NCBI GenBank assembly: GCA_001600695.1
Contig: BCKQ01000003.1
Location: forward strand, 1,365,142-1,429,141
DNA: 64,000 bases
Origin: Ascoidea asiatica JCM 7603
Lineage: Eukaryota > Fungi > Ascomycota
Reading direction: 5' to 3'
The notes beneath the pieces were generated by a model. That model saw nothing but the letters and a program-made list of their open reading frames with translations. It did not search any database and had not been told where the DNA came from. The translations under genes and the position numbers were made by a program. Shown one piece after another: positions 10,764-36,080 of the stretch (position 1 is the stretch's first letter; each line of letters opens with the position of its first letter).

Positions 10764-12146
10764 TTAGCCAAAGATTTCTGATTCAATCTCAAAACAAACT
10801 TTTGTAAAAATTTCAACAATTTTTTCAATTTCTTCTTTACTTACAACATATGCTGGTGAAAACATTATATGATCACCTTTATCACCTAATGTACAGTCCA
10901 TACCTAAAAGTTGAAGACCTTTTTTGAAACATCTTTCACTTACTTTATGTGCCAAATCAATTTTTTTATCAAATGGTTCTTTTGTTTTTTTATCTTTTAA
11001 AAATTCAACACTTCTAAATGTTCCAATACCTCTAACTTCTCCAAAAATTTTGCTATCTTTTAAATTTTCATTTAATAAATCATTCAAATAATCTCCCATA
11101 ATTTTGCAATTTTCAATATAATTTTTTTCAAAAATTTTTTTTTGAATTGCTAAAGAAACTCGACAATTAAATGAATGCGATTGATATGTATGACCTCCAG
11201 TAATTTTACCAGAACCTTTAATGAATACTTCTCTAACTTGTGGTGAAATTAAAACTCCTGCAATTGTTACATATCCACTACCTAATGTTTTACCAATAGT
11301 TTGTATATCTGGTCCTTTATTTAATGGTAAATAATTTTCCCATGCATGATATTTTCCACTTCTACCCATTCCACACATAACTTCATCTAAGATAAATAAT
11401 GATCCATATTTATGACAAATATCTCTAATTCCTTCTAAATATCCTGGAACTGGTTCAACACATCCTAAACTAGATCCACTTATTGTTTCACAAACAAATC
11501 CAGCAATATTCTCAGGTCCTGCTTCAATAAATTTATCATCAATTTCTTTAAGAAGTCTATTTTTATATTCTTCTAAATTTTCATTTGATTTTTTATCATG
11601 AAATGGAAAACATGGACTCACTTTTAAAAATTGTTCTTGAGATAAATTAACTGGTCTAAATTCTTCATATCTTGGTGTATCTCCAATTGATAAAGATCCT
11701 AATGTAAAACCATGATAACTTTGCTTTCTTGAAATAAATTTTGTTCTTTGACGTTCTCCTTTTTCAATAAAATACTGATATGCAACTCTAAGCATATTTT
11801 CATTTGCTTCTGATCCAGATCCAACAAAAAATCCAGAAGAAAATGAACCTTTGGGAGAATGATCACAAATAAATTCAACTAATTTTTCTGCATTATAATT
11901 TCCTGTATATAATGTAAATGAATAAGCACATTCCTCTGAAGCTTTTTTCATTTCTTCAATGATATCTGGATCGCCATGTCCTAAACTACCAACCGAAGCT
12001 GATGTATTACCATCAATAATTTTTCGTTGGGTATGAGTGACCGGATCTTCAACTGTTAAATAAACTCCTTTACCTCCAATTATCATTGGTTGTTTTTCAT
12101 CAATTATTGATTGAAAAAGGAATGATCCTGTATTCTTGCTTGACAT
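10764..12146 (-). CDS. PLP-dependent class III aminotransferase (fungal omega-amino acid / BioA-like family; substrate unknown)
   Basis: GSGSEANE, SYHGFTLG, FILDEVMCGMGRSG, PDIQTIGKTLGSGY (PLP lysine), GHTY. Confidence 0.92.
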   Translation of the reverse strand: MSSKNTGSFLFQSIIDEKQPMIIGGKGVYLTVEDPVTHTQRKIIDGNTSASVGSLGHGDPDIIEEMKKASEECAYSFTLYTGNYNAEKLVEFICDHSPKGSFSSGFFVGSGSEANENMLRVAYQYFIEKGERQRTKFISRKQSYHGFTLGSLSIGDTPRYEEFRPVNLSQEQFLKVSPCFPFHDKKSNENLEEYKNRLLKEIDDKFIEAGPENIAGFVCETISGSSLGCVEPVPGYLEGIRDICHKYGSLFILDEVMCGMGRSGKYHAWENYLPLNKGPDIQTIGKTLGSGYVTIAGVLISPQVREVFIKGSGKITGGHTYQSHSFNCRVSLAIQKKIFEKNYIENCKIMGDYLNDLLNENLKDSKIFGEVRGIGTFRSVEFLKDKKTKEPFDKKIDLAHKVSERCFKKGLQLLGMDCTLGDKGDHIMFSPAYVVSKEEIEKIVEIFTKVCFEIESEIFG

Positions 12147-14468: not shown

Positions 14469-15614
14469 TTATGATAAAATATCTTTGAAATTTACAGTTG
14501 GAGAACCCCTTTGTGGAGATTTTAGCAAATTAGCTTCATCTTTCCAACCTATCCAATGAATAACTCTGAAAGTTGCTGGAAGGCAAACCTCATTTTCAGA
14601 AGAAGGATCCATTTCATTAGGAACACCGTAAAATTTTTTATAAATTTGATCAGCTGCTATTAAAACATCTTTGGAAATATAATTTTCTTTACTAAATAAA
14701 CAATTATTTTCGCCCATAATTTGTAAATCATTCAATAAATCAAATAAAGTAGGATAATTAATAACAATTTCATCTATATCAATTGTTAGCATTTTAAAAC
14801 CAGCCTTATTTAACAAATTTCCTAAATCTTGAACAGTTACAAATGGTGATATATGTGGAGATAAACCATTCTTTCTTTCTAATTCAGCTAATTGAAGTGA
14901 AGATCTTAATTCTAATAAAGTATCAGTTCCAAACATTGATCCTATAAAAAGGGACTCTTTTGAAGAAAGTAAAGAATAAATCCTTCGTAAATGGTTTGGT
15001 AAATCGTTGATCCAATGCATTGATAAATTTGATAAAGCAAGATTGTAATGATTTTGTTTCAAATCATCAGAATTCAATGATTCTTCGTCACAAATCACTT
15101 TTTGAATTGACACATATTTAAAATTATTCATTATGTTATAATGATCTTTTTCATTTCGTGATAATAATTCTCCACAAGAATCAATCATTGTTAAATTATT
15201 TATTTTTTCTCGAACGATTTTTTTTTCTTTATAATATTCCTTTTCCATATCTGTGATAATTTCGGATTCTTTATCTAGAATTGATGTACTACTGTTATCA
15301 TTTTTTATATCCTCGAATAAACTAGATACAAAATTTCCAGATCCAGACCCAATTTCAACAGCATTTTCAAAATTTCTATTAATGAAAGATAATCTTGATA
15401 TTATTTTTCGAGCACATTCATTTTTAAGATATTGAACTGAATTAAAATCTTGTTGTTTTGCAGATCTGAACTTTTGTTTTAGTTTTAGTTCTCTGTTGAA
15501 AACCCTAAAGGTTGGGTTAGAAGAAACTGAGGAGTATTTGAATTTAGCAATTTCATAACCTGAATTTAAGGACTTAAATATGGCCTTTTTAGTAAAACCA
15601 ATATTTGGAAACAT
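14469..15614 (-). CDS. NDUFAF5: Complex I assembly factor NDUFAF5 (SAM-dependent methyltransferase fold, arginine hydroxylase)
   Basis: VFNRELKLKQK, EIGSGSG, SNLSMHWINDLP, DTLLELRSSLQLAELERKNGLSPHISPF, DLQIMGENN, LPATFRVIHWIGWK; mitochondrial presequence-like N-terminus. Confidence 0.93.
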   Translation of the reverse strand: MFPNIGFTKKAIFKSLNSGYEIAKFKYSSVSSNPTFRVFNRELKLKQKFRSAKQQDFNSVQYLKNECARKIISRLSFINRNFENAVEIGSGSGNFVSSLFEDIKNDNSSTSILDKESEIITDMEKEYYKEKKIVREKINNLTMIDSCGELLSRNEKDHYNIMNNFKYVSIQKVICDEESLNSDDLKQNHYNLALSNLSMHWINDLPNHLRRIYSLLSSKESLFIGSMFGTDTLLELRSSLQLAELERKNGLSPHISPFVTVQDLGNLLNKAGFKMLTIDIDEIVINYPTLFDLLNDLQIMGENNCLFSKENYISKDVLIAADQIYKKFYGVPNEMDPSSENEVCLPATFRVIHWIGWKDEANLLKSPQRGSPTVNFKDILS

Positions 15615-18600
15615 GATCTATCTTCTAACCCTTTATAAAATTGTAGTCAAGTAATATTCTTTATTCAAATCCAAGATGTTATAATTGAAGCAGTTTTTTT
15701 TTTATTTTACTTATTTTTCACAATGAATGAATTTCAGTAAATAAGTTACCGACAACCAGAACTCTGGATCTATATGCACGTGCTTCTCTATATCACTAGA
15801 AAATCTTTTAACTAGAGCCCTGACACGGTCTAGGCTTTGAGTTTTGTCCAAGTGGATTTATTTAAAATTCTGTCGAAATATGGTTTTCCAGGTACAACTA
15901 GCTAAGCGCGCGTTCAACGGTTTTCTTCAGGCACAAAAACGGTTATGCTATTCTATGTAATTTTTGTAGGCCAAGGATTGCATAACTTCCAAACATTCAA
16001 AGTTAAACTGCCTATGATGTAAGTTTATAAAATATAGTGTAATTCAAAGCAAATAAGTGTAAATACCTGTACATCCGCGTCTTAATATTAAAACTTTATT
16101 TGCTTACAACTTGATTAAGCCTTTCTGTTCAACGGTTTTGGTAAAGTATTGGAGTGTCCTATTTTGAGCAAAAGCCTCAAGCTTAATAGTTCGGCCAATA
16201 TGGAACAGCAATATGCTCTAAAAATACTAGTAATTAACCTTACTACAAAATACAATATTTCATCAATATTTTTCAATTTTCACATATTCTTTAGACGTTC
16301 TTTTTATACAGTTATTGCTTCTCATTTCTTTCTTTCTGGAACACCGCCATTCATACATAATAAATTTATCAAAACGTTGTAGAAAAGAGTAAACTTGTAA
16401 AATGGTCTCAGTCAAATTGATTATGTACTATTAACCACATTCTTTTATAATGAGATTTATTTATCGCATATAGTTTCCTAATTAGTGTCTTTAATTGGTG
16501 ATTATAAACCTTTCTATAAACATCAAAAAATTCAGCACAGAATACGTGTTAATTGCACATTCTCTTCAATTGCATTAAACTTTCTCAATCCTTGGGAATG
16601 TACATTAGGCTTCTAACATAATAATTTTAAAGGTCAAAGATCATCGTCAGCTTTTAGATAAGATAATCATAATAAGAAACAGTAGTTGAAGTTTAACGGT
16701 GCATGACTTTCATTAACAGAAAAAAAATATTACTACAAATAGTGCTATTGTAGTTATCGAAAAGGATAAAGAAAAATTTTTACCTAAATTAGAATGCAAA
16801 TCTTTCCTCTAATACAAAATTTAACTATATTTGAAAAATTCTCGACAATTTAATGGATTTTGACTTTTTAATATAGGCCTAATAATTATTTTTTAAAATT
16901 CCGGACAAATTTTTAACCATATTTATTCCGAATCATATTCACAGTTTTGGCTAAATTTAATTCTCATGTTTATTTTTAACATTCGTTTTTAAGCTTATTT
17001 TCTAAAATGTCAATTAATAACTAAAAGATTGTCTCCTTTAAAATTTTACTACTACTATTATTAATATTGGCCAACAAGAATTACCTGTAGTACCTTATAC
17101 ACAACTGCACTTTCAAAAAAGTTCCGAAGGAAAAAGCATAAACTTTCAGCTAATTACTTGCCAGTTTTTAACTAGATCGAGAATTAATAAAATAAATAAA
17201 CTGTCCTTCTTTATCGAGTCACCTCAATTGAAACAAAATTTTGAGATTATTATATCTTCTGAACTAATCATAACTTCATATTTTGAAAAAGTTTTTCAAT
17301 AAACAATTTTATGTTTTTAACTTGGACTAACTAGTAGTAAAGATCAGCAATTTCTAAAAGAATATTTAAAAAGAAAAAAATTGATTTATTTCTGTTAAAA
17401 TTCAAATGTTTAATTTTAGCACTCGTCGGTTCGTTTTCAAAAATCCTTTTTATAATTCTAAATATAATTATTTTGTAGCATTTAAACCACTTTCATGTTT
17501 ATTTATAAGAAGTTATTTTCTTCATAAAAAATACTTCGAACCCAATATACTATAAAAGATTGATTTAAAATTGAAATAACACACATTCCTTCCATTTTCA
17601 TTATAGTACTCTAATAAATCATTGAGCCTTTTCCTTATGTCAATGGAATACATTATTCAACTCTAAACTAAGATTGAACTACTTTGATGCTATTGAAATG
17701 AGTTCTATATAATTATCAAAAATTTAAACAAATATTTTTCAACCGATGATTAGAGAAATTGAGACTTTTTTGAAGACTCTAGAAGCAGGAACTAGAGTAT
17801 TTTTGTACCAAAACGGCACTTGAATATTTTTTTTTTATACCTCGATAATACTTGTCAGGAAATTTTAAGAGTACACAATTTATTTAATTATTCAGTCAAT
17901 GTAAATGGAAAATAAAAATCTGAAATTTTTTTGTATGACTATTTTCAAATTTAAAATATATTTTGAATTAATCGACTTTCTATATGAGAATTTTTACAAA
18001 ATGTAGACTGAATTTCAAGCCATAAACAACTTACTTTATCAAAACTAATAAATGAAAGCAAGTTAACCTACAAATTATTGTAATTTGAGATTTACTCCAT
18101 GGAGCATCTGCCTTTAACCTATCGTACCGTACAACTCATTTATATTTCTAGTATTCTTTATATTTATGATATCTAATTAATCTGGATAACTAATTATTTT
18201 TTGGATTATTCTTAGATTGCAATATTCAATTCATTCCTGCTCTCCAAATATCATTATAGCGTTATTCCTTTAGACACCTTCAAAATAGCAATATTTTACT
18301 GTGAATTCTAAATATGTGCATTTCTGCACGACCAGTAAAGTAGTTCTGGAGGATGTTGTTCTGTGCAGGTGCTTCTAAAAATACTTCTAAAAATATCTGG
18401 CTCTAGCTTTTGCAAATTTAATCGACAGACTTTCTATAACTTTATTGATCTCAATATTGGGCATACTCTGATCTGATTTCCTTATATAAGGTGAGAGATA
18501 TTTCGCTTCTTTTTTTGACTTGATTGCAGTTGAATTTTATTTCTTAAACAAAAATCTTTTACTTACAATATCTGGAAAACTTTATAAATATTTTAAATTG

Positions 18601-18839
18601 GCTACACCAAAACATTGTTAAATTTTAAATACTTCTAATCCATTTCAATATTCTTTCCTTAAATTTTCATTTTATGCTACTTTTTTGATTATTTTTATTA
18701 AAAATACTCTATTCTTTCCTTTATTTATCTTCGACTAATACTCTCAAACAATTCTCTCCTTTCTCAAAGCTTTTTATAATTAACAATTATTCCTTTCACT
18801 ATATCATTATTACTTTAAAAGGTGCTATATATTTGCAAA

Positions 18840-20288
18840 ATGTCTGTCAAGCCAAAGTTTTCCTATGAACTAAGTCTAAATCAACCAGAAATTGGTGCCA
18901 AATCCTATAAAGAAAAAGGAAAGGTTTCAAAAAGAAAATTTCATCCAATTGTCAAGTTAAAAGCATATAATCATTTAAATGAAAATATAACTGATAGTTT
19001 GAATCATAGATATATAGTTCTTGCCAAGCTTAAAAATGCTGCGAATCCTACTTCATCTGCTTATATTTATTCTGAAGAAGATCTAGAAACTTTTTTAAAA
19101 GGTAATAAAAGTTGCACAGGTTCATATGATGAGTTTGAAAATGAAATTGTTTTTGCTTTTCCAGATTTACATATAATAACAGTCGGTTTATTTGATGTTA
19201 ATTATCAGCTATACAAAATGTCAGAAAATGAATCTTCTGTATCAACTATTGAATATATTGATAATATATCAAAAACAATTAAATTCGTTACAACCAGAGA
19301 GTTATATGCAACTGATGCTAATAATTCTATAAAAACAACAAATAATACAATCAAAAAAAGGAAAAGAACTTCTGCTTCTAATACCCAGATATTTCCTAAG
19401 AATAGTTCTCCAAAAAATCAAAAACTTCCTCAGGTTACGCTTCAAAACACTTCAAATTTCCCTTCAAAAAGTACATCCCAAACTCTTAATAATCCTCCAA
19501 ATTTCTATAACTCAAGTTTAAAGCCAAACAGTTCACCAGGACATGCAAATGATTCAAGCAATAATGAAATGGTGAGTTATAATTCTAATATATTATACCA
19601 GCCTCCTTTCCAAAATGCATTTATGACTAACGATCCAACCTATTTAAATCAAAATCAATCATTGAATTATCCTTCTTCCTTATCAAGATGGAATAGCCTA
19701 AGCAGTGCAAATAGCATTGGACCTACAGTAATGGATTTTCAACAAAACAATATAAACATTAGTGCAAATACTACTCCTTCTGCCATAAATCAAATTTATT
19801 TTCAATCTATGACTCCTAAGCCACAAGCCTATTCTCCAACTGCCAATGAATTTGAACTAGCTCAATTAAGCAATATAAATAATATCAATGCTATAAATAA
19901 CATCAACAATTTGAATACCATCAGCAATCTCAACACAATAAATAATCTAAATAACGTCAATAGCATTACTAATATTACCAATATGAATAATATAAATAAT
20001 ATAAACAGTATGAGCAATATGAGTAATATGAATAATATAAGCAATTTCAATAATATGAACACTAATGCAACAAATATCGCATCATTCAATGCACAAAATA
20101 TGAGGGCAAATTACTTAGATTCTAACTCTACACATGATTCAATAAGTTATGGACAACCAACAGCATCTTCATCATCACGACAATACAGCTTCAGTGATTC
20201 CTTAACAAGCAGTATAAAATCTGAATCAGTTACAACCATGCGAAGTCAAGAAAGTTTGAAAGATCAATTCAATTTTGTTCCAAAATAA
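18840..20288 (+). CDS. Divergent Velvet-domain-like transcription factor, copy 1
   Basis: ATG at 18840. YELSLNQP..A / RKFHPIVKL / YIVLAKL / LKGN / FAFPDLHIITVGLFDVNYQLYKM is collinear with the Velvet consensus; KKRKR NLS; N/S/Q-rich tail. Confidence 0.72.
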   Translation: MSVKPKFSYELSLNQPEIGAKSYKEKGKVSKRKFHPIVKLKAYNHLNENITDSLNHRYIVLAKLKNAANPTSSAYIYSEEDLETFLKGNKSCTGSYDEFENEIVFAFPDLHIITVGLFDVNYQLYKMSENESSVSTIEYIDNISKTIKFVTTRELYATDANNSIKTTNNTIKKRKRTSASNTQIFPKNSSPKNQKLPQVTLQNTSNFPSKSTSQTLNNPPNFYNSSLKPNSSPGHANDSSNNEMVSYNSNILYQPPFQNAFMTNDPTYLNQNQSLNYPSSLSRWNSLSSANSIGPTVMDFQQNNINISANTTPSAINQIYFQSMTPKPQAYSPTANEFELAQLSNINNINAINNINNLNTISNLNTINNLNNVNSITNITNMNNINNINSMSNMSNMNNISNFNNMNTNATNIASFNAQNMRANYLDSNSTHDSISYGQPTASSSSRQYSFSDSLTSSIKSESVTTMRSQESLKDQFNFVPK

Positions 20289-23200
20289 GCTACAAATTAT
20301 AATTTAAAAGATTTCTCAGTTTCAATAACAACATCAATATTATCTTGTCCTACATTTTTATTATTTTGCTTTTTATTTTCTTCCATAATTTTTTTTACAT
20401 ATTTTCTCTTCAATTTGTTTCGGTTGTTTAAGTTGATTGGGATAGTTTACATTTTCTGTTTCATTTTTTGATAGACGGTTATTCTTATACTAAAAGAAAT
20501 GCTCATAAATTTGATTTCTGCATTATTTAATCCTAAGTTTTTTAACTGTTATCTTTTTTTTTTTCTGTTGTATTATGATTTATCATTCAATCTATTCTCT
20601 TTTTAAAGTTTCTTTCAATTAAATGTTTCATCTCCACTTTTTTAATTATTTTTATCTTGTTTTCTTTGCTGTGCTTTTTCTTTCTTTCTATCTTTATTTT
20701 TATTTTTAAGATCCATGAAATATGACTTACAAATTTTTGATAATATTACTCTATAAATAGAACATCTAATCTTTCTAAAAAATTTGTCTTGACTACCAAA
20801 AGTAGCTTTTTGTTGAAACTAAAATAATTTGGGAATATTTTAAAACTTTCTTTTGGTTTCATCAGCAGTAAAAGAGAATTGAAATTGCTTTTATTTCAGA
20901 AGATTTCGAGCTATGTTTAATAATTGATAACTGAAACCCAACATTTCCCGGTTGCTCACAGATTTTTTTGAAATCTAGATCCAGCTTCCAGGTTTAACCG
21001 GGTCACATGATCCAGTACACGAAAAACATGATAACGCAAAACATGGCTGCGCAAAAAAGGCCCCTGTAAAAAGTCTCCTTCAAAACGGAACGCACAAAAC
21101 ATGAGGCGGACAATTGAGACAATAAGATGCAGCACAACGTACCATAAAAACCGTTTTTCCAGCATAGGCACTAAAATTCTAGTTGGCGCACAAAGATGTC
21201 TGTACAAAAAAGGCAATCTCTTTTCTGAATCCATCAAGAAAAGCAAATCCACAATTTTTTGAGTTACGTTGTTCAATGGAGTTGGAATCCCCCTTTTAAA
21301 AATTGTAGATTCTTTTATTTCTTTTCATTGGGGTTTCAATATTTCAAGATATCGCAAACCTCTTTGAACATTCAAGTAATTACAATAATCCTGCCTTTTC
21401 TTTAATAAATTCATTTTGAAGCAAACTCAATTGTCTTTTCTTCTTCTTATTATAATGAAGTTTCTACTTAGATTCGAAAGTTTTGAATTCTTATAATAAC
21501 CTGTTATTAATTATCAAAATGAAAACCTTTTGGTAGTGGCCGATGCATAGTCTTTATTATCATTCATTTTTCTTTTTTTTTGGTAATTAAAAATTAGATT
21601 CAGATTTCAAAATTTTAAATGAGTTATTTCTTATATAGATTTAATATAATTTGTTAGGTTTGTACTTATTGGTAATACTTTTGACGTTTTTTATAATTTT
21701 ATCAACTCCTCTTAAAGATTTATTAGATCAAAGCTTTCAAATTTTCTTTTCATTTTCAAAATAAAATACTATAAATACGATCTTGGTATATTCAAAGCAT
21801 TATATTATTTGTTTCACTCAAAGAGTGTAAAGTTATTCATTTCTATGGCAGGCAAAGATTTAAGTAAAGATATCAGTCCGTAGAATTTCCGCCAATACAT
21901 GACATTAAAAAGAATTCACGGATTTAATCAAATTTGGATGCCGTGGGGTCTGTCCTTTACTTTACTCAATTATATTATATGAAACAATTCATCAATTTTA
22001 TATCAAACTTGACAGCAAAATTATTTGCTAAACTAGATACACAATTCATAAAATTAATTCAAGAGGTGCGATTTTCATAACTTCTAGTAGTAAAATAAAT
22101 AAAGATCATAAAGCTCATGGAGCGTCAGACATTAAAGAATAAATTTCTAACATCATTAGGTGGAAAAAAAATTATATTTAGTTTCATTTTAAATTTCAAA
22201 AAGAGATCTGAATTTCAAGAGTCTCAATGAGCATGTTTTGAATTTGAGAAATTTATTTTTAAATCAAAATATATCAAATGCTTTTAATTTTTTTATAGAT
22301 GTAAAACAAAAAAATAAAAAAAACCTAGCTTTTCTAAATTTTGAATCAAATTTTTTTGTTTCCCCAATGTTTATTGTGAAGACAGTTGAACACTTTTATT
22401 AGAAAATCTCCGAGAATAGAATTATAGCCCATTTTTATTTTTAGTGACTACAATAGCGTTAAGGAGAGTTATCCTAAATATATAATAGTTGAAGCATATT
22501 ATACTGAATACAGTTCGAGTACTTATTATGTAAATTATGCTATAAACAATAAACAAAATGGTTAATCAGTTAAATTAATCAACTTATTTTTATCTTTCAA
22601 TTTAACGTTCTTATATACTGAACACAAATTTCTCCCTTTTTTTTCAAGGGCCTAATATATATTTTATATTTTAAAATTTAGACTTTTCCTATACAAATAT
22701 ATATATATATATATATTGAACGGACGCCTCCATCACAGATGCATTTTTTGATTTTCTGACAAATAAACGCCGGAAAAACAAATAATCCGTTAATAGAGTT
22801 AAAATAATATTATATAACTGATGACTTTATTTTGTTTATTTCTAGAAGGATTAAAAATAAGTTAATAGAATTAGTGAATCCATTGGTTGATAGCTTTTGA
22901 AAAATTTTGAGGACTTTAATCTGTTGTTACAATACATACCATAAAAAAACTTTTAAATTTAGCCAACTAGTACTCCTTTAAAAGAAAGGCCCTAGAGACT
23001 CGGCTCACTTTAGTCTATTCTGGCTGTAAAACTATCTGATCATCTCTGAAACTAAAATAGTATAATATAAAACTAAAAAGAATATACATATAAGTTTTTT
23101 CTTCACTAGAAAACATTAAAAACAAAGGAAATAGATTTTCTTTCAAGGTACTTTCATAATTGTCTATGTAAATTTTAAAACGCAATTGAAATTAGTGATA

Positions 23201-24186
23201 TAGTATAGATGAAGATATAAATTATTGAACTACATTATCTTGGAGACTAGTAATTATTTTTGAATATATTCTTATAAAATTGTAATAACTAATTCTATTT
23301 CAGGAATCTTCAATACTTTGATGGCTAGCATTGTGAATTAAATCATTCTGGAAGACATTCTTCTATTTAAAAATCTCAAACACACTTCTTGAGTCAGAGT
23401 ATCCATATTCAATGAGTATCCAATATCAATTTGGCAATAAAAATTTGCGGCGGACCAAAAGATTTTTGGCTAACAAGGTTAAACTTGCAACGTCCGTGCA
23501 TATACTCAAAGAAAGAAGCAGCACCCCAAGTTTACATACCGCTTTCGATAATATGGCCGTTTAAAAACCTTCTAGAAGCAAATCACTTTTTTGAAAATTT
23601 GGAATCTGTTGATTTTCCTTATTCCGATATTGTAGAAAAAAAAGAAAAGAATAACGCACTATCCTTGCAAGAAGCATTAATTGGCTTCCAAAACGGTTAT
23701 TTTGGTACTAACGTTCTTGAAAGATTTTCAACTTCATTAAATATTTTAACTATTAGTCTCTATTTAACCCGTACTATGCAATGAACTTATTCCGATATTT
23801 AAAGTACTTCCACAAATTGGTATATTTTAGATATGAAAATTTAGAAGCTTTTTGTAAATCTGCATTAATTTATCCAAAAAATATTAGATTAGTTTTATTT
23901 TAACTACAATTGATGAAAATTTTTTCAATGGCTATGTTCTTTACATATGTTCAACTAAATTCCTAGGAATAGTATAAAGCTAACCTTTTCTCTTTTCTTT
24001 TTTGTTTATTTCTGAAATATTTATTATACATCAACCTAAATTTTAAATAACTGTCATTATTTTTTATAAATTTTGTATATTGATTTATAATCATCATTCC
24101 TTTTGTCATTCATTAACATATTTCTCTCTATTAAAAAAGTGTTTTCCTTAAAAACCACATTTTAAAAATTCTATCCTCTTTTTTCA

Positions 24187-25620
24187 ATGAATCAAATTCA
24201 GTATAAATTTTCAATTAATCAGCCAAATGTTGGAGCAAAATCCTATAAACAAAGAGGAAAAATTTCAATAAGAAAGTTTCATCCATATGCATCATTAAAT
24301 ATATTCAATTTTAACAATGAAAATATAACTTCTCAAATCAATGATAATTTCATCTCAATTGCTCAATTAATTGAAAATTCAAATTCTTTCGAAGTTTCTA
24401 GAAATTTTAGAGATTGTGATTTAAAAGGAAATAAATCAAGTACTGGAAGATACGATGAATCAAAAGGTACCATTGTTTTTGAATTCCCTGATTTACATTT
24501 TACTAAGATTGGTATCTATAAAATTGAATATCAATTATATAAAATTACTCCATTAAATGATGAAAATCAAACTATGAATTGGCAATTTATTTCAAAAGTA
24601 TCTAAACGAATTGAAGTTGTTACAACAAGAACATTATACGGAGTTGGTGTAAAAGGTTCAATTGAAATTTCAGAAAAAAATACCAATAATTTAAATTCAT
24701 CTACTAAAAATATAAACAATATTGAAGATACTAATAATAAAAAAAATAACTCTAGCATTAGTAACAATACTAATCAGAAAGATTCAAATATAACTTCAAG
24801 TAATCAAATAAAGTTGGAAGAAAGTAGTACCTCGAATTCCTGTTCAAGTTCAAGCACAAATTTCAATGAAAATATCTTTTCAAGTACTCTAACCCAAAAT
24901 GGTTTCATTAATCCAATAATAAATAATATGAATAGTAATATGAATAGCAATATGAATAGTAATATGAATAATATGAATAATAATAATAATAATAATAAAA
25001 ATAATGATAATTTAAATCTTAATTTCAATGTTAACTCAAATCTTAATTCAAATCTCAATTTAAACTCATTTAATCAAAATTTTCAAAATAATATAAGCTT
25101 TGTAAATAATACAGAAAATCATCTAACAAATAAGTTCACTGTAAATAATTCAAGAAGCAATTCATATGGCAATATTGTTAGTTCAAATTTAAATAATTTT
25201 TCAAATATTTATAATAATTTAGCAAATTATTCTATGAATGGAACTAATGCAATTCCAATTGTATCAGATTTATCTTCAAATTCTACACCTGTTTCTATTG
25301 AAAATGATTCAGTATATGTGAGTGAATATAATATACCAATTCCCATTTTCGATCAATCTATTTCTTCAGTATCACCATCAGATTCTTCTTTCTCAATTTA
25401 TCAGATATCAAATTTTAATAATGCTTCTCAATTAATGAATTTTAATGAAAATAATTCAATAAATAACATTAGACTTACCACCAATAATAATAATCATAAT
25501 AATAATAGCAGTAGTACTAGTAATTCTATCAGTAACTCAAGAAACCCTAGCTTTAATCAATTCAATAATGAATATACTGGAGAAATATTTCCATTCTTTG
25601 GTAATATAAACAATCTTTGA
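24187..25620 (+). CDS. Divergent Velvet-domain-like transcription factor, copy 2 (paralogue of 18840)
   Basis: YKFSINQPNVGAKSYKQRGKISIRKFHP, LKGNKSSTGRYDE, IVFEFPDLHFTKIGIYKIEYQLYKI, VTTRTLY; Asn-rich tail. Confidence 0.72.
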   Translation: MNQIQYKFSINQPNVGAKSYKQRGKISIRKFHPYASLNIFNFNNENITSQINDNFISIAQLIENSNSFEVSRNFRDCDLKGNKSSTGRYDESKGTIVFEFPDLHFTKIGIYKIEYQLYKITPLNDENQTMNWQFISKVSKRIEVVTTRTLYGVGVKGSIEISEKNTNNLNSSTKNINNIEDTNNKKNNSSISNNTNQKDSNITSSNQIKLEESSTSNSCSSSSTNFNENIFSSTLTQNGFINPIINNMNSNMNSNMNSNMNNMNNNNNNNKNNDNLNLNFNVNSNLNSNLNLNSFNQNFQNNISFVNNTENHLTNKFTVNNSRSNSYGNIVSSNLNNFSNIYNNLANYSMNGTNAIPIVSDLSSNSTPVSIENDSVYVSEYNIPIPIFDQSISSVSPSDSSFSIYQISNFNNASQLMNFNENNSINNIRLTTNNNNHNNNSSSTSNSISNSRNPSFNQFNNEYTGEIFPFFGNINNL

Positions 25621-26407
25621 GCTAAAATTAGTTTCTTCTGTATAGTAGACACTTACTCTTTTTACATTTTTTTTTATAAATCGATGTTGCTTTTTCTTTT
25701 TCATATATTTTCAGGTTTTACTTTATTTTTTTGCTTTAAACATAAGCTTTTCTTTTTGTATTATGCATTTTTTTTTTTATTATAAGCCAAACCCATACAT
25801 ATTAATACAACTTAATTTAAATTAAAAAGCGAGAAGAATTGTAATTTGGATTCAAAACATATCTTGAAAGAAAACCTTCAACTAAAAGACAAATATCAAA
25901 ATTCAAATAATGTAAAAAGGAAATCAAAATCTATAAAAATAAATTATAATGAATGTATGTTCTACCAGCCATATAAATCTCCAACACCATCCAACTGCAA
26001 GATTGAAGGCGACTCTGAGGGTTATTAGGCACTAAGATGAACAGTTAATCTCTCCAAAGGCTCGACACCTATCATCTCAATTGAGAATGAAAGACAAGTA
26101 ACACAGGAAGAAGCTTTGGTTGTCCGCACACTTTTTGTGGTGTATGAGGAAAAAAAAGAAAAAAGAAAATTAATAAAAAAAAAGCAGAAATTTCATTTCT
26201 TTTAAATGAAAACTGAATGGTTACCCGTCTTTATATAATAAAGACCCATCAGAGTTTGAAACCAGGGCTTTTCTTAGGGCACGAAAATGAACGAAATGAA
26301 AGAAATAATTAGCGCTGATAGAAATAGCAAAAGAAGCAGAATGAAAATAAAGAAGAAGTATTGAAAGAAGCTGATAAAAAAGAGTGATAGAAAGATTAAT
26401 CAGTAAT

Positions 26408-27427
26408 ATGACAAAGAAGAATAGTTTACTCCCTTTTTCATCGCAGGACTTGTCCAAGGTAGATTTAAACGCTGGTTCTTCTCCTTCAGACAGCAACTAC
26501 AACAAAAATGTTAGGTTTGAAATACATATCCGATTCTCCAATGGTCAGATATCTGATTTAATAATTCCAATAGATACTTATGATGATTTGTCTATGATTG
26601 ACAACAGATATTTGAGGATCAAGGTCAGACAGTACAGTAAGAAGGAAGCTTATGACAAAAGATTAAGATTCATATACAATGGTAAAATAGTGAATGATAA
26701 ACTTAATTTACAACAAGAATTAATGAAGTTTGATTCTTATATGCATGATAATGATAGCAATAAAGATGGATCTAACAAGGAGAATAGTAATAATAGTACT
26801 AATGAAACTATTGATAAAAAGGGTAAGGCCAAAGATGACTCTGAGACTAATATTCATAAATTTTATATACATTGTTTAATAGGTTCAACTTTAAGTGCTG
26901 AAGAATTAAGAAAAGAAGATTTAATGGATGCTAAAATACCAGAAAAATCAACAACACCTGCTCCTCTGGGATTTGATAGATTAAGATCTCAAGGTTTTAG
27001 TGAACAAGAAGTAAATGATTTAAGGTTACAATTTCGTAGAATTTATGGATTACCTGCTAATTATAATTCAAATAATAATGAATCTGGTATAGGTGCTGAT
27101 GATGAAATTGATTTAGATAATTCAAATAATGCCAATGGTTCTAATGGGTCTAATGGAAGAATTAATGATATTCGTCAATTGGAAGATAGATGGATGGATA
27201 ATGGTGCTAATGAACCAGATGATGAATTTAATATGATGAACATGGGAAATAATGTTATGGGAACAAATCAAGATTTATTAATTGGTATGCTAATGGGAAC
27301 TTTACTTGGAGTGTTGAGTTTATTTTTCCTTAGAAATGAATTTATGATAAGTAAAAGACAAAGAATGGCAATAGTGGCTGGTATTATTACAAATTTCTCC
27401 TTTTCCTTAGTCAGAAGCTGGACTTAA
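26408..27427 (+). CDS. DSC3: Dsc E3 ligase complex subunit Dsc3 (ubiquitin-like + UBA-like + C-terminal TM)
   Basis: ATG at 26408; IRFS..DL, LRFIYNGK, YIHCLIG, PAPLGFDRLRSQGFSEQEVNDLRLQF, RQLEDRWMD, DLLIGMLMG..SKRQRMAIVAG. Confidence 0.88.
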   Translation: MTKKNSLLPFSSQDLSKVDLNAGSSPSDSNYNKNVRFEIHIRFSNGQISDLIIPIDTYDDLSMIDNRYLRIKVRQYSKKEAYDKRLRFIYNGKIVNDKLNLQQELMKFDSYMHDNDSNKDGSNKENSNNSTNETIDKKGKAKDDSETNIHKFYIHCLIGSTLSAEELRKEDLMDAKIPEKSTTPAPLGFDRLRSQGFSEQEVNDLRLQFRRIYGLPANYNSNNNESGIGADDEIDLDNSNNANGSNGSNGRINDIRQLEDRWMDNGANEPDDEFNMMNMGNNVMGTNQDLLIGMLMGTLLGVLSLFFLRNEFMISKRQRMAIVAGIITNFSFSLVRSWT

Positions 27428-28029: not shown

Positions 28030-30236
28030 ATGTACCAATCACCTTCAAGGTCCTTAGAATCTATTTCTTCTAAGATATATATTTATTATCAAAAAGGTAT
28101 TCATCACTTTTCTTAATCAATAAATTCTTAAAATATATTAAGTATTAAAAAATATTAACAATATATTAAAAAATAAAATTTAATCAATTATATCAAATTT
28201 CAAAAATTTAAGGTGATTATTTTCGAATACTTGATTTAATATTATCAGATACTGATATTTTATACTCAGAATCTTTAAGTCCTTCAACTAGATTAATTAT
28301 ATCTCTAACTTTACTTACAAAATTGAATAATAATTATAAACTGGAAGGTTTTCAACAATTTTTAATATTATTAGATTTTTTCAGTTCAAATTTTGTTCAA
28401 AAAGCAAAATATTTGAATATTTTAAATAGAATTTTTAAAATTGATCCTTTTTGGGAAAAAGAAAAAAATTTGGTCGCAAATGAATATAATTATTATAATG
28501 ATTTATTCACAATAGAAAAAACTGGTCAAGATTCTTTCAGTAATAAAATTGATAGTTATATTAATAATGGTAATGATAATGTTAATTTGAATATTAGTGC
28601 TCTAAATATTAAATTTTCTGAAAATTCAATAAGTAATTCTAAAATATCTTTAATTCAACAAGCACGCAATTACATTGATTTTCTTCAGTTAACTGAAAAT
28701 GAAATACAACATAAATATATTCAATCATTCAATGTTTCTTTTAATGAAATTTTATCAATTAAAAATAAATTATCAAAATTATCTACTGCAATGAAAGATA
28801 ATTTCATTCCAAATTTTAAGAAAAATGAACCTAATAATCCAACAACAAATTTCGCTTCATTGCTTTTAAATAATAATACCTTTACATTCATAGTTTCAAA
28901 TTTGTTTAATGAAATAATAGATTCAGATTTTTTAGTCAATTTACGAAAGTTAGTCGATTTAGAAATTTCAATATATTCGGATATTAATATTCTTGATTAT
29001 TCTGTTCTGTTACAACCTAAAATTTTAATTAAAAAAATCGAAAAATGTTCAAGACCATCTAAAACTTATGCACTTAAGTTTGTTAACGCTATTATAAAAC
29101 TCAATATCATTAATAGTTTTTTAAAAATAATAGAAGGCAGTGATTATTATCTTGCTTATGAGATCCTAAGGGGTTTAATTAGGTTCATAAATTCCATCGA
29201 AACAAAATCAATAAAAAGAAAAATGACTTCTAAAGAATTGAACGAAAATTTCTTTCTTTCTAAATCAACAAAAGATTCAATAATAATAACATGCTGTAAG
29301 CTTTCAATGTTCTTATCTCTCAAAGAAAAGGAAGTTTCATCAAATGATTTGGAAAATTTATTTTCTCAAATTCAATTTATTGAAGACTTGAATATAAATA
29401 AAACTAATATTCGAAATTCATTAATATCAAGCAATTCGGATTTAATCTTAGAATCTGCTTCTATTGTTGAAGATATTGATAATGATTTTTCTAGTGGAAA
29501 ATTAGGGGAATTTTTTTTTGCTGCTGGTTTAATTAAAGAAAAATCTGCTTATGATAAAAAAAAACTTGTTTCTTTAGAAAATAATGAAACAATTACAACA
29601 GGTGTTCGATTATCTAAATCCTGTATAGATGAAATGATAAGGTATTATATTATAGCAACAGTAACCAAATTAGAAGATGATCCTACTTTACTTTATATAT
29701 TCGATAGAATTTTATGGGGATTGCTTATGTATGGAGGAGTTCATATTAAAACTTTATGGTTTTTTAAAATGCTTCGAGATTATTATAACACTAAATTCAA
29801 ATATTATCCAGTTTACATGAAAGATGAAGTTTTCAAAATTTGTCCTGAATGGTTTAATGGATATTCGTTTATCAGGCAAATATATGGGTTAAAAGATTCA
29901 ATTAAGGCACGATCTATTGATATGTGGGATGAAAAACAAGGAAGTAGTTTTTTAATTCCTCAAGCTTTATTGACAAAAAATGATGAGATAATATTACTAG
30001 ACGAATTTTTTGATGAAAATAACCCTTATGGAAATAATAAAAGATTTGTTTTAGAAACTGCAGAAAGAGCTACTAGGATGCTGAGAAGTCATATTAAGTT
30101 GCATCACAAAATTGTTCAACATCAAATAGATAAAAGTCGTGGTTGGATAAACTTATGGGTTGAAAGTTATTCAGACCATAGATCCAAAGAACTTCCAATA
30201 GCAATACAAGATATTTTAGAATTTTGTTCAGAGTGA
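28030..30236 (+). CDS. Spliced hypothetical protein (~696 aa), exons 28030-28096 and 28213-30236
   Basis: ATG at 28030 (MYQSPSRSLESISSKIYIYYQK); donor GTATTC at 28097; branch-like TATTAAC at 28153-28159; first downstream AG at 28211-28212. A phase-1 join (G|GT = Gly) restores the frame of the 28323 ORF, which is open back to 28212. Confidence 0.72.
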
Positions 30237-30376: not shown

Positions 30377-31735
30377 TCAACTTAAAGCAGCTGCAATTGA
30401 GTTTTTTAAAATTGTGAGGCCGTCAATTATTACATTATCTTCAATGGTTAAGGCTGGTACAAATCTGATTACATTACCAGAAGCAGAAATTATCAATAAA
30501 CCTCTTTTTCTAGCTTCGTCGATTACTTTGTTTACTAAATCACCATCCTTAAATTCCATACCCAATAGAAGACCTTTACCCCTAACCTCTAAAATATCAT
30601 TTGGATATTGTTTCTTCAAATCATTTAAAAACTCAACAAAAATGGAAGACTTTTTATTGACTTGATTTAAAAATTCAGGTTTTGAAAGCTGGTCTATAAC
30701 ATATAAGCCTATTCTGGATCCTAATGGATTACCCCCATATGTAGTACCATGATCTCCAACATGTAAAACACTTTCAATTTTTTCATTCACAACAGTTGCA
30801 GCAATTGGAAACCCGTTTCCTAAGGCTTTTGCCATTGTAAATATATCAGGATGAGCATCTTTTGGTAAATATGAATGAGCCCATAATTTTCCTGTTCTTG
30901 CCAAACCACATTGAATTTCATCATATATTAAAATTACGTCATTCTTCTTACATAATGCTTTCAACTCTATCAAAAAGGATGTATCAATTGGATGAACTCC
31001 ACCTTCCCCTTGAACAGGCTCTATTATTACACCACATGTATTTTCACTGATCAAGGCTTTAACTGATTCAATATCATTTGGAGTAGCTACTTTAACACCA
31101 GGAACTAGTGGACTATATGGTTTTTGATATTTTGGATTTGGTGTTACAGACAAAGCTCCCATTGATCTTCCATGAAAACTTGATTTAAAGGTAATGAATT
31201 CGTATTTATCTTTATTCTTCAATGTTCCATATTTTCTAGCAAATTTCAAGGCAGCTTCATTTGCTTCTGTTCCTGAATTGCATAAAAATACTCTTGAGGA
31301 ATTATACATTCCTTCATTTGCATGAGTTTTTTCAATGATTTCCTTTGATAACTTTGTTGTGTATAAATTATGATATAAATTTGAAGAATGAACTAAAGTG
31401 TTTGCTTGATCAAACATGATTTCTGCAATTTTTGGATTAGAATGACCTAACCCGGTTACAGCTATACCTGCAGTAAAATCAATATATTTTCTATCTTCTA
31501 AATCCCATAAATAAGCATTTGAACCTTTTGTAAAAACTAAATTAGGTCTTGAGTATGTGGTCACAGCAAATGGAGCATTTTCCTTCAAGAATGAAAGTGT
31601 CTTTGATTCAAAATCTACTGGATCGGGATGAGTAACTGGAGAAACAGCAAAATATTTTGACGATTTTGAAAAGCTTCTTCCAAAAGCCAAAGAACCAGAT
31701 ATCTTGGAAAAACCTCTTAATGAACTTTTAAACAT
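30377..31735 (-). CDS. ARG8: Acetylornithine aminotransferase, mitochondrial
   Basis: YIDFTAGIAVTGLGH, CNSGTEANEAALKFA, FHGRSMGALS, IIEPVQGEGG, DEIQCGLARTG, AKALGNGFPI, HGTTYGGNPL. Confidence 0.97.
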   Translation of the reverse strand: MFKSSLRGFSKISGSLAFGRSFSKSSKYFAVSPVTHPDPVDFESKTLSFLKENAPFAVTTYSRPNLVFTKGSNAYLWDLEDRKYIDFTAGIAVTGLGHSNPKIAEIMFDQANTLVHSSNLYHNLYTTKLSKEIIEKTHANEGMYNSSRVFLCNSGTEANEAALKFARKYGTLKNKDKYEFITFKSSFHGRSMGALSVTPNPKYQKPYSPLVPGVKVATPNDIESVKALISENTCGVIIEPVQGEGGVHPIDTSFLIELKALCKKNDVILIYDEIQCGLARTGKLWAHSYLPKDAHPDIFTMAKALGNGFPIAATVVNEKIESVLHVGDHGTTYGGNPLGSRIGLYVIDQLSKPEFLNQVNKKSSIFVEFLNDLKKQYPNDILEVRGKGLLLGMEFKDGDLVNKVIDEARKRGLLIISASGNVIRFVPALTIEDNVIIDGLTILKNSIAAALS

Positions 31736-35500: not shown

Positions 35501-36080
35501 TGAATTTATTTTTTGACCAATCTATTAAGATTCTATGTTTATTATTGATTAAAATTCTTTCAAATTCAGTTCTATTATATAATATATCTAATTTTAGTTC
35601 ATCATCAGTTGATAAATTTGTATTATTTAAAAAGATATTTGAAACAGTTCTTGAATTTCTTTCTTTAAGATTGTTATTGTTATCTTTTGAACTATTATTG
35701 TTGTTTTCATTACTATCATTGATTGGAATTGAATATAAACCATTTTTATCAAAAATGAAATTTGGTAGATTATAAATTTTTAATCTTTTATACATATAAG
35801 ACAAAGCTTTGATTTGTAAATCTATATCATCTTCATTTTGACCTTGAATGTAAGAAGGAATTTTTTGATAAGAAGAGAATTTATTATAAATTGCATCAGA
35901 ATCAGATTCTATAGAATCTATTGAATCTGTGGATTCAGTCTGATCAGTTATAGATTTTAACGAATTATTCTCATTTTCATTTTGAAATTCATTATCATTT
36001 TCATTGTCACTATTAGAATCAATTTCCAAATCACTGTTATTTGTGTTATTTGACCAAATAGCACTCAAAAGACGATTCAT
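32520..36080 (-). CDS. Hypothetical 1186-aa Ser/Asn-rich protein with a globular N-terminal domain
   Basis: Long ATG-initiated ORF; ordered segments at about aa 85-310 (YMYKRLKIYNLPNF...LQRLSFHVQVKRIF) and a short C-terminal helix; family not recognised. Confidence 0.8.
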   Translation of the reverse strand: MNRLLSAIWSNNTNNSDLEIDSNSDNENDNEFQNENENNSLKSITDQTESTDSIDSIESDSDAIYNKFSSYQKIPSYIQGQNEDDIDLQIKALSYMYKRLKIYNLPNFIFDKNGLYSIPINDSNENNNNSSKDNNNNLKERNSRTVSNIFLNNTNLSTDDELKLDILYNRTEFERILINNKHRILIDWSKNKFRSLLILSEPPKFLKNLPNLNPINKFFKFSILNSSSNLSNYIHILVNQSNFYIEHNIDKNFKKFFVKDSYNFQWNLILSQNRNFLNKDDRNNIIQGYLQRLSFHVQVKRIFNVYLFNATHLNNSSNISNSSINSNSTLEPTDSNEINFSDNFSNTLTDNNHDNDNEIYSDIENDNNSNFEEKIQINIQNQNINYINNQIFDNNSDNYIDNNINTNINKYNNDSNDNNVKNNNDDNNSYNYTPLSFNNLLNPTPIDQDYQSYISSHDSNDDYSNVPHYARPTSSSSSRSRKSSLTTSFSNNNFKNNKNNNNLLPKRPRSRAQLRQFHHTLKESSSKDIDNIDSKTFLSSLSPIAKSPLIKKDILSPLTPDTGKSLPTSFISNDNTNKIHLNSDSISSTTTTTTSTTTTFSHSNYKRFSTSTLGSSYSNSHHSFNKSKLKLRSPKSPIISPIENLLSHTPSPKRLSLIENQIQVLKRSSISQKDSNTYSLLTTTRNSSPNSSRRNSKTNGRILVLSDPNLVTNSPTSDLHYAMEKKLKNLSISSLDSAIEENSNPNSNNSSATSSISSTSAISFNTDSNENHEMNEHLQLGQDSRGNHQVLKKHNKILSLTVPDYLSGRNDHKNYSNELLNRKRSKSTLESNSRRTLKPLNINTFNSNTAIRTLSKAKSISNIKSEYSLAEEFNKTIMHSDLENNELKINRPTTSLSITKNAYSKKHYKDISIESKILLNSESRLSSRSRSPNMVSKNNAILNRGNLSTDYKSPIGGVIQSNNVLLSDLNSSNRSSILSSFPQTSTTSNKHKSFINSNPTLRKRQSMTILTLDSYYDSTKMIGNRNDGYSSDGASSIHSASTEDLSRYSTETKNLTNILIPKKLNNSSSPGSLLGRGFYSYGNSSRKQSKFSPTWFSEPEYDVPFEQKISILEDCRIAVKMRIDRERQLLRGRTITDFSDTKTGTGENSPNEEENDIYGMNYFLVNDVQQDPMIDIIIEEAGEDVD

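What the first reader, a model, noticed from the sequence alone, without database searches (positions are those of the whole stretch)
18840..25620. Tandem pair of highly diverged Velvet-domain (NF-kB-like) regulators in a budding yeast
Seen: two co-oriented genes share a ~150-aa N-terminal domain (NQP.xGAKSYK..GK.S.RKFHP; LKGNKS.TG.YDE; IVF.FPDLH...G....YQLYK; VTTR.LY) followed by unrelated N/S/Q-rich tails. Known: the Velvet consensus runs Y.L.V.QQP.RAR..RR..PPPIVQL..F...A.L..L.G...FVFPDLSVR.EG.FRL.F.LF..S..F.V...K.F, and these blocks appear here in the same order and at similar spacing. Velvet proteins (VeA/VelB/VosA, Histoplasma Ryp2/3) control fungal development, act as dimers, and are absent from S. 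cerevisiae and C. albicans. Inference: a cryptic Velvet lineage survived and duplicated in this yeast, possibly forming a homo/heterodimer system controlling hyphal or spore development.
Basis: partly seen in the sequence, partly recalled or inferred. Interest (0 to 1): 0.9.

Follow-up and report, generated by a model that had tools for sequence, protein, structure and literature searches.

The report
Diverged velvet-domain regulator gene pair
Two neighbouring genes in an Ascoidea-like yeast encode very diverged but genuine velvet (NF-kB-like) domain proteins; they belong to a velvet family that is already large in this genome and already reported in some budding yeasts, so this is a sound but fairly ordinary find.

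Summary
Two co-oriented single-exon genes (18840-20288 and 24187-25620) share an N-terminal domain of about 155 aa (43% identity, E 7e-37). Their N/S/Q-rich tails are unrelated.

The domain is a diverged velvet domain:
- Pfam Velvet scores below its cut-off (20.9 and 15.9 bits, cut-off 25).
- An intermediate paralog links the pair to Pfam Velvet.
- hhalign against canonical velvets of the same genome gives E 1.3e-5.
- Two AlphaFold models, one built without any canonical velvet in its alignment, both hit only VeA, VosA and VelB at the top (Foldseek E about 1e-7; VIA Z 14.9, 13.4, 12.7).

The "cryptic surviving lineage" framing is wrong. This genome has at least 10 canonical velvet genes and at least 12 diverged ones, which this scan had already noted on other DNA of the genome. 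Velvet genes in some Saccharomycotina are published. The same syntenic pair exists in Ascoidea rubescens, where UniRef already names both proteins "Velvet domain-containing protein".

The basic DNA-contact loop is conserved and the domain is under purifying selection (dN/dS 0.14-0.19). A heterodimer on what appears to be the canonical velvet dimer face is predicted (ipSAE 0.77, best control 0.00). Most likely this is a lineage-specific pair of dimeric velvet transcription regulators. Its biological role is untested.

The parts
18840..20288 (+). Copy 1 gene, 482 aa, single exon. Ortholog of A. rubescens ODV63272.1 (P0001).
   Evidence: ORF. 65-67% identity to P0001 over the domain. Sister to P0001 in the tree with support 99/100. 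Synteny. No CTG codons.
18840..19310 (+). Copy 1 velvet-like domain, about aa 1-157: seven-strand beta-sandwich plus helices.
   Evidence: PF11754 20.9 bits, E 4e-4. AF2 pLDDT 84.7, pTM 0.76. Foldseek top 7 hits all velvet, E 1.7e-7 to 2.7e-6. VIA Z 14.9 (VeA, rmsd 2.4 A over 136 residues), 13.4 and 12.7 for VosA. ESM Atlas features: 26 of 30 hits are Velvet clusters.
18882..18950 (+). Copy 1 loop A (aa 15-37, QPEIGAKSYKEKGKVSKRKFHPI). It holds 7 Lys/Arg and is the equivalent of the VosA DNA-contact loop (K37, K39, R41, K42).
   Evidence: Alignment A2. 12 of 23 residues are invariant in the four-member clade. VosA mutagenesis in PMC3876986.
19095..19121 (+). Copy 1 clade-specific LKGNKSCTG motif (aa 86-94), at the centre of the predicted dimer interface.
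   Evidence: 9 of 13 residues in aa 86-98 are invariant. Interface residues 88-96 have the lowest predicted error.
19353..19367 (+). KKRKR basic cluster (aa 172-176) just after the domain: a candidate monopartite nuclear localisation signal.
   Evidence: Conserved in P0001 (VKKRKRES) and absent from copy 2 and P0002. The NLS function is inferred from the sequence.
19371..20285 (+). Copy 1 N/S/Q-rich low-complexity tail.
   Evidence: Beyond about aa 220 of copy 1 it does not align with the ortholog's tail.
24187..25620 (+). Copy 2 gene, 477 aa, single exon. Ortholog of A. rubescens ODV63274.1 (P0002).
   Evidence: ORF. 57% identity to P0002 over 155 aa. Same syntenic position.
24187..24642 (+). 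Copy 2 velvet-like domain, about aa 1-152.
   Evidence: PF11754 15.9 bits, E 0.013. AF2 from a clade-only alignment of 4 sequences: pLDDT 71.9, pTM 0.67. Foldseek top 7 hits all velvet, led by VeA at E 8e-8 and 23-25% identity.
24220..24288 (+). Copy 2 loop A (aa 12-34, QPNVGAKSYKQRGKISIRKFHPY), with 6 Lys/Arg.
24421..24447 (+). Copy 2 LKGNKSSTG motif (aa 79-87), in the predicted interface.
15615..18839 (.). 3.2-kb gene-free region upstream of copy 1. It is shared, in divergent orientation, with the NDUFAF5-like methyltransferase gene.
   Evidence: Only one 77-aa TTG-start ORF lies here. No tRNA or Rfam match in the part searched, 15000-27000.
20289..24186 (.). 3.9-kb spacer between the two copies, upstream of copy 2. 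It is the longest gap between ORFs of 200 aa or more in the window.
   Evidence: It contains two unique GC-richer islands. Its DNA is not conserved with A. rubescens.

Best explanation
The two genes are an anciently duplicated, syntenically conserved pair of highly diverged velvet-domain proteins. The duplication predates the split from Ascoidea rubescens, and the subfamily is so far seen only in Ascoidea. It is one branch of a large velvet radiation in this genome: at least 10 canonical and at least 12 diverged loci. Shown: each N-terminal domain of about 155 aa adopts the velvet beta-sandwich fold. Inferred: the domains bind DNA through the Lys/Arg-rich loop A between strands 1 and 2. They dimerise, most plausibly with each other, through what appears to be the same sheet face (strands 3, 4, 6, 7) that VosA-VosA and VosA-VelB use, and the clade-invariant GNKSxTG motif sits in that face. 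The unconserved N/S/Q-rich tails would act as disordered effector or activation regions. Copy 1 carries a conserved KKRKR nuclear-import signal that copy 2 lacks, so copy 2 may enter the nucleus as the partner of copy 1, as VelB does with VeA. The target genes and the biological process are unknown.
For: - Paralogy: 43% identity, E 7e-37.
- Sequence link to velvet: the only Pfam family near significance is PF11754 (20.9 and 15.9 bits here; 24.5 and 22.5 bits for the A. rubescens orthologs). There is also a transitive link: the clade profile hits paralog C20:202k at E 2.6e-5, and that paralog passes the Pfam Velvet cut-off at 36.7 bits. hhalign of the clade against canonical velvets of the genome gives E 1.3e-5, probability 80%.
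- Fold: two AF2 models, one made without any canonical velvet in its alignment, each have VeA, VosA and VelB as their top 7 Foldseek hits. The next hits are about 1000-fold (copy 1 model) and about 20-fold (copy 2 model) weaker. VIA gives Z 14.9, 13.4 and 12.7 against 9.5 for the next chain.
- Protein language-model features: 26 of 30 nearest clusters are Velvet.
- Conservation pattern: across the four clade members, loop A is 52% invariant, the GNKS motif region 69%, and the tails about 0%. dN/dS of the domain between orthologs is 0.14 and 0.19.
- Synteny with A. rubescens. UniRef names both orthologs 'Velvet domain-containing protein'.
- Heterodimer prediction: ipSAE 0.77 in three runs, best of 3 controls 0.00. 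That mark was reached by 51 of 78 solved complexes and 2 of 108 mismatched pairs. Partner pLDDT is at least 79 and the runs agree in at least 89% of contacts. The interface lies on model strands 3, 4, 6 and 7, the strand set PMC3876986 names for the VosA dimer.
- DNA-binding loop and dimer roles of velvet domains: PMC3876986.
Against: - Neither protein reaches Pfam's curated cut-off, and a clade profile finds no PDB chain by sequence.
- The second half of velvet motif 3 (FPG..ST.L...G.kI.IR) is not recognisable.
- The copy 1 AF2 model used an alignment that contained canonical velvets. The clade-only copy 2 model has only moderate confidence: pLDDT 71.9, and loop A is below 50.
- The dimer pass may be the model's memory of the solved VosA-VelB complex. 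It cannot tell heterodimer from homodimer, or from pairing with one of the 20 or more other velvet paralogs (caveats).
- The match of model strands to VosA's published strand numbers was made by counting strands in the model, not by structural superposition.
- No expression data exist.
- DNA binding, nuclear localisation and function are all untested.
Confidence: 0.7

Rival explanations
1. The proteins have the velvet fold but no longer act as DNA-binding factors. They would act as dimerisation partners that modulate or titrate the canonical velvet proteins of the same cell, as dominant-negative or specificity subunits. This is comparable to velvet proteins that act mainly through heteromeric complexes.
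For: The genome holds at least 10 canonical velvets that could be partners. The dimer face is predicted with high confidence and contains the most conserved clade motif. The motif 1 consensus QQP..AR..G..DRRP.DPPP is heavily rewritten to NQP..GAKSYK..GK.S.RKFHP. The structural check found that a pass does not tell which family member binds.
Against: Loop A remains very basic (6-7 Lys/Arg) and is among the most conserved segments of the clade, which is hard to explain without a ligand such as DNA. R32 and P36 align with near-invariant velvet positions. Copy 1 keeps a nuclear-import-type motif.
Confidence: 0.18
2. The domain is a generic immunoglobulin-like or p53-like beta-sandwich that merely resembles velvet by convergence or by bias in the models. 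On this reading the genes are lineage-specific proteins of unrelated function.
For: Sequence scores are below Pfam's cut-off. There is no PDB hit by sequence profile. Many Ig, STAT, p53 and Runt domains appear lower in the structure lists.
Against: Velvet is the only family near significance for all four clade members. An intermediate paralog links the clade to PF11754. hhalign gives E 1.3e-5. Velvet structures lead both Foldseek lists (the next hits about 1000-fold and about 20-fold weaker) and lead the VIA list by more than 3 Z units, including for the model built without canonical velvets. All motif blocks are collinear.
Confidence: 0.04
3. One or both copies are decaying, functionless duplicates of the velvet expansion.
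For: The family does shed members: one array member on contig 20 has 4 in-frame stops. The tails evolve very fast.
Against: Both ORFs are intact in two species at about 70% DNA identity. Domain dN/dS is 0.14-0.19, and conservation is concentrated in functional loops.
Confidence: 0.04

Closest known systems
Velvet family regulators VeA, VelB, VosA and VelC of Aspergillus nidulans (Pfam PF11754; structures 4N6Q, 4N6R, 9I2S)
   Same: Same fold: Z 12.7-14.9 and rmsd 2.4-3.3 A over 136-141 residues. Collinear motif 1 and motif 2. A basic loop A at the position of VosA K37, K39, R41 and K42. A predicted dimer on strands 3, 4, 6 and 7, the strand set reported for the VosA dimer. The domain sits at the N-terminus and is followed by a disordered tail.
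   Different: Only 12-25% identity in the structural alignments, and below Pfam's cut-off. The domain is compact (about 155 aa) with no long insert between motifs 1 and 2. The QQP..AR..DRRP.DPPP signature is rewritten. The FPG..ST.L helix block of motif 3 is not recognisable. A GNKSxTG motif is new to this clade.
A. rubescens ODV63272.1 and ODV63274.1 (UniRef 'Velvet domain-containing protein')
   Same: Direct orthologs: 65% and 57% identity in the domain, the same tandem arrangement, and the same flanking genes (NDUFAF5-like methyltransferase, Dsc3, class-III aminotransferase).
   Different: Tails are unalignable. There is an extra 637-aa ORF downstream in this genome. No functional data exist for either species.
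Expanded velvet family of Saccharomycopsis fibuligera (12 genes; PMC5106798) and the Saccharomycotina velvet clades of Wu et al. 2024 (PMC10845976)
   Same: A budding-yeast lineage (same order or a sister lineage) with an unusually large velvet repertoire.
   Different: Those surveys counted Pfam- or BLASTP-detectable, complete velvet domains. This clade falls below those criteria and was found in only one other species among 1.84 billion representative proteins.
Rel-homology/NF-kB, Runt, STAT, p53 and CP2/Grainyhead DNA-binding beta-sandwiches
   Same: Same broad superfold (Z 7-9.5).
   Different: Clearly weaker matches than velvet, and no sequence signal.

Membership tests
Velvet (PF11754) | Profile match at or above Pfam's curated cut-off (25 bits) | tested here: not met
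   20.9 bits (E 4e-4) and 15.9 bits (E 0.013). The orthologs score 24.5 and 22.5 bits. Velvet is nevertheless the top or only family for each. This is a detection threshold, not a biological feature.
Velvet (PF11754) | Homology shown through intermediates or profile-profile comparison | tested here: met
   The clade profile hits C20:202k at E 2.6e-5, and that paralog scores 36.7 bits on PF11754. hhalign of the clade against canonical velvets gives E 1.3e-5, probability 80%, over 45 columns.
Velvet (PF11754) | Velvet fold: a twisted seven-strand beta-sandwich with helices | tested here: met
   The AF2 models have 7 main strands plus helices. The top Foldseek and VIA hits are VeA, VosA and VelB only.
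Velvet (PF11754) | Motif 1 (N-terminal, with Lys/Arg in the DNA-contact loop A) | tested here: met
   It aligns as Y.L...QP..G/A.K/R....R/K.R/K...P. There are 6-7 basic residues, and R32 and P36 are at least 90% conserved across 19 family members.
Velvet (PF11754) | Motif 2 (F.FpDL....G.f.L.F.L) | tested here: met
   FAFPDLHIITVGLFDVNYQLY and FEFPDLHFTKIGIYKIEYQLY. F107 and G116 are invariant in all 19 sequences.
Velvet (PF11754) | Motif 3 (f.V...K.FPG..ST.L...G.kI.IR) | tested here: inconclusive
   Only the first half aligns (kFVTTReLY). The FPG..ST.L block is absent at the sequence level. The copy 1 model shows a helix at 152-163; the copy 2 model shows only a short low-confidence helix at 147-151.
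Velvet (PF11754) | Dimerisation through the sandwich face | tested here: inconclusive
   Prediction only: ipSAE 0.77 against a best control of 0.00, with the interface on model strands 3, 4, 6 and 7. It may reflect the model's memory of 4N6R.
Velvet (PF11754) | Sequence-specific DNA binding | not testable with these tools
   Needs EMSA, PBM or ChIP.
LaeA-type methyltransferase partner encoded next door (velvet complex) | The neighbouring Methyltransf_23 gene is LaeA-like | tested here: not met
   The neighbour (14472-15614, - strand) is an ortholog of NDUFAF5, the complex I assembly factor. It is conserved across fungi and animals.

The most novel reading that the evidence does not exclude
The pair is an Ascoidea-specific obligate velvet heterodimer with a rewritten DNA-contact loop, and therefore a new DNA specificity. 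The NLS-bearing copy 1 would ferry the NLS-less copy 2 into the nucleus. It would be one module of a velvet radiation of more than 20 genes that took over developmental control (hyphae, asci) in a budding-yeast lineage otherwise thought to lack velvet regulation.
Probability: 0.2. Interest if true: 0.55.

Novelty: new member of a known kind. Interest (0 to 1): 0.3.

Why it matters
The pair shows that Pfam- or BLAST-based velvet surveys undercount the family. In this Ascoidea-like yeast more than half of the velvet-type loci fall near or below the standard thresholds. This pair forms a distinct, conserved, compact subfamily with a rewritten DNA-contact loop.

That is useful for three purposes: annotating Ascoideales genomes, building better velvet profiles, and studying how an NF-kB-like fold diversifies its DNA and partner specificity.

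It does not change the general picture. Velvet genes in part of the Saccharomycotina are published, and the orthologs are already auto-labelled as velvet.

Tried and rejected
1. LaeA idea. The divergently oriented neighbour is a Methyltransf_23 protein, so I asked whether it could be a LaeA-like partner. It is an NDUFAF5 ortholog instead. Rejected.

2. Profile of the clade against PDB sequences: no hit even at E 10. The link to solved structures therefore rests on fold comparison.

3. Exhaustive HMMER search of 1.84 billion representatives: only the two A. rubescens orthologs. The other two hits (P0003, P0004) are leucine-rich-repeat proteins matched in 8-11 short stretches, so they are false positives.

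4. Expression: only DNA runs hold the locus and no RNA run exists. Read laying was therefore not used, and expression is untested.

5. Spacer content: no tRNA or Rfam family in 15000-27000. The GC-richer islands at 21000-21299 and 23400-23699 are single-copy and are not conserved with A. rubescens. They remain unexplained.

6. Placing the clade within VeA, VelB, VosA or VelC: the tree puts it on a long stem (1.76) with weak placement (55/56), next to other long branches. No assignment is made. VeA is merely the best structural match.

7. The lower dS between the two copies in this genome (0.93, against 1.75 in A. rubescens) was considered as a sign of gene conversion. In a genome of about 25% GC it is more simply explained by codon bias, and it was not pursued.

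8. Whether the Wu 2024 survey contains the A. rubescens orthologs: neither the accessions nor 'Ascoidea' appear in its held supplements.
Full report
**Observation.** The window is very AT-rich, about 25% GC. At the stated coordinates there are two co-oriented, uninterrupted ORFs. Copy 1 runs 18840-20288 (482 aa from the first ATG). Copy 2 runs 24187-25620 (477 aa). BLASTP aligns their first 164 residues at 43% identity, E 7e-37. The rest of each protein is N/S/Q-rich low complexity with no significant similarity. Neither gene contains a CTG codon, so the ambiguous CUG decoding known in Ascoidea does not affect the translations.

**Relatives and origin.** A word-indexed search of 5.8 billion proteins found one relative of copy 1. 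An exhaustive HMMER search of 1.84 billion representatives found two real relatives, both from Ascoidea rubescens DSM 1968: ODV63272.1 (P0001) and ODV63274.1 (P0002). The two remaining hits are leucine-rich-repeat false positives.

UniRef already names both A. rubescens proteins "Velvet domain-containing protein", although no Pfam domain is precomputed for them. In A. rubescens the two genes lie in the same order and orientation, between the same neighbours: a Methyltransf_23 gene, then the pair, then Dsc3, then a class-III aminotransferase.

Copy 1 groups with P0001 (support 99/100), and the four proteins form a clade (100/99) on a long stem. So the duplication predates the split of the two species. 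Coding DNA is about 70-75% identical to A. rubescens, which makes this genome an Ascoidea-like species other than strain DSM 1968.

**Is it velvet?** Five lines of evidence agree.
- *Pfam.* PF11754 is the only Pfam family at E below 0.01 for any of the four domains, but always below the 25-bit cut-off: 20.9, 15.9, 24.5 and 22.5 bits.
- *Transitive link.* A profile of the clade finds other diverged paralogs in the same genome. One is C20:202k at E 2.6e-5, and that domain passes PF11754 at 36.7 bits.
- *Profile-profile.* hhalign of the clade against eight canonical velvet domains of this genome gives E 1.3e-5, probability 80%, over motif 2.
- *Fold.*
  - The copy 1 AlphaFold model used a 19-sequence family alignment (pLDDT 84.7). 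Its top seven Foldseek hits are VeA (9I2S), VosA (4N6Q) and VosA-VelB (4N6R), at E 1.7e-7 to 2.7e-6; the next hits are at 5e-4.
  - VIA-align gives Z 14.9 (rmsd 2.4 A over 136 residues), 13.4 and 12.7 for these. The next chain scores 9.5, and Runt, NFAT, STAT and p53 domains score 7-8.6.
  - To remove circularity, copy 2 was folded with only the four clade sequences (pLDDT 71.9). Its top seven hits are again the velvet structures, led by VeA at E 8e-8 and 23-25% identity.
- *Language-model features.* 26 of the 30 nearest ESM Atlas clusters are Velvet.

In a family alignment the velvet blocks are collinear. Motif 1 is Y.L...QP..G/A.K....R.K..P. Motif 2 is F.FPDL....G.f...YQLY. The first half of motif 3 is kFVTTR.LY. 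The second half of motif 3 (FPG..ST.L...G.kI.IR) is not recognisable.

A clade profile finds nothing in PDB by sequence alone.

**Family context.** The genome (20.3 Mb, 71 contigs) is not short of velvet genes.
- PF11754 finds 10 canonical full-length domains, at E 9e-65 to 4.5e-21.
- A family profile finds about 22-24 distinct loci. Among them is an array on contig 20 at 174-211 kb with at least 8 members, one carrying four stop codons.
- Earlier notes of this scan, made on other DNA of the same genome, reported a hidden expansion of about 30 velvet-type genes and a local array of at least 9. My counts agree in kind.
- Published work reports velvet genes in part of the Saccharomycotina (PMC10845976) and a 12-gene family in Saccharomycopsis fibuligera (PMC5106798).
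- The 2024 survey used BLASTP with the VeA domain and discarded incomplete domains. By its criteria this clade would probably have been missed. Neither the ortholog accessions nor 'Ascoidea' appear in its held supplements.

**How it probably works.**
- *DNA contact.* In VosA, loop A between strands 1 and 2 carries K37, K39, R41 and K42, which are needed for DNA binding (PMC3876986). The equivalent loop here holds 6-7 Lys/Arg and is 52% invariant across the four clade members.
- *Conservation.* Invariant residues are concentrated in loop A, the clade-specific GNKSxTG motif region (69%), motif 2 and VTTR.LY. They are absent from the tails.
- *Selection.* dN/dS of the domain between orthologs is 0.14 and 0.19. 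dS is about 1.8 and near saturation, so these values are approximate.
- *Dimer.* Prediction of the two domains together supports binding but does not show it.
  - The score was 0.77 in three runs, against 0.00 for the best of 3 controls.
  - That mark was reached by 51 of 78 solved complexes and 2 of 108 mismatched pairs.
  - Partner pLDDT is at least 79, and the runs agree in at least 89% of contacts.
  - The interface lies on model strands 3, 4, 6 and 7, the strand set reported to be buried in the VosA homodimer and in VosA-VelB. It includes the GNKSxTG motif.
  - I matched the strands by counting them in the model, not by superposition. The pass may be memory of 4N6R, and it cannot separate heterodimer from homodimer or from pairing with other paralogs.
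- *Nuclear import.* Copy 1 and its ortholog keep a KKRKR cluster right after the domain, which copy 2 and its ortholog lack. This suggests, by analogy with VeA and VelB, that copy 2 could be imported as a partner.
- *Regulatory space.* Both genes sit behind the two longest ORF-free stretches of the window, 3.2 and 3.9 kb. This fits heavily regulated genes but proves nothing.
- *Expression.* It could not be examined, because only DNA runs hold the locus.

**Rejected leads.** The neighbouring Methyltransf_23 gene is an NDUFAF5 ortholog, not a LaeA-like velvet partner. The spacer has no tRNA or Rfam match, and its two GC-richer islands are unique and unconserved.

**Verdict.** The claim of novelty was overstated, for three reasons:
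- This is one diverged, Ascoidea-restricted subfamily within a family that is abundant in this genome.
- Velvet genes are already documented in some budding yeasts.
- The sister species' orthologs are already auto-labelled as velvet.

I rate it a new member of a known kind, with modest interest.

Noticed in passing
G000 contig 20, about 174-211 kb (loci L019, L021, L023, L042, L044-L046, L048): An array of at least 8 diverged velvet-type genes. It includes two near-identical copies at about 200 kb and 209 kb (tree branch lengths 0 and 0.05) and one copy with 4 in-frame TAA stops, probably a pseudogene. The family is still duplicating and decaying.
   Followed up: partly
window 21000-21299 and 23400-23699: Two GC-richer islands (40% and 35% GC against about 25% background) lie inside the 3.9-kb spacer between the two genes. 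Both are single-copy in the genome, are not conserved at the DNA level with A. rubescens, and have no Rfam or tRNA match. Their nature is unknown; a regulatory element or an unannotated RNA is possible.
   Followed up: partly
window 28323-30236 (+): A 637-aa ORF with no Pfam match lies between Dsc3 and the aminotransferase gene. It has no counterpart among the genes called in the syntenic A. rubescens locus.
   Followed up: no
window 14469-15614 (-): An NDUFAF5 ortholog (complex I assembly factor), 61% identical to A. rubescens ASCRUDRAFT_40449. Its presence is consistent with this yeast retaining respiratory complex I.
   Followed up: yes
window 10764-12146 (-) and 30377-31735 (-): Two class-III aminotransferase genes lie within 20 kb, on either side of the velvet pair.
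   Followed up: no
window 1037-4990 (+): A 1317-aa ORF lies in a stretch of only 15-17% GC, with a weak match to Sfi1 spindle-body repeats (37 bits).
   Followed up: no
window 32520-36080 (-): A 1186-aa protein carries an STD1/MTH1 glucose-signalling domain. It is far longer than a typical 208-position STD1 module would need.
   Followed up: no
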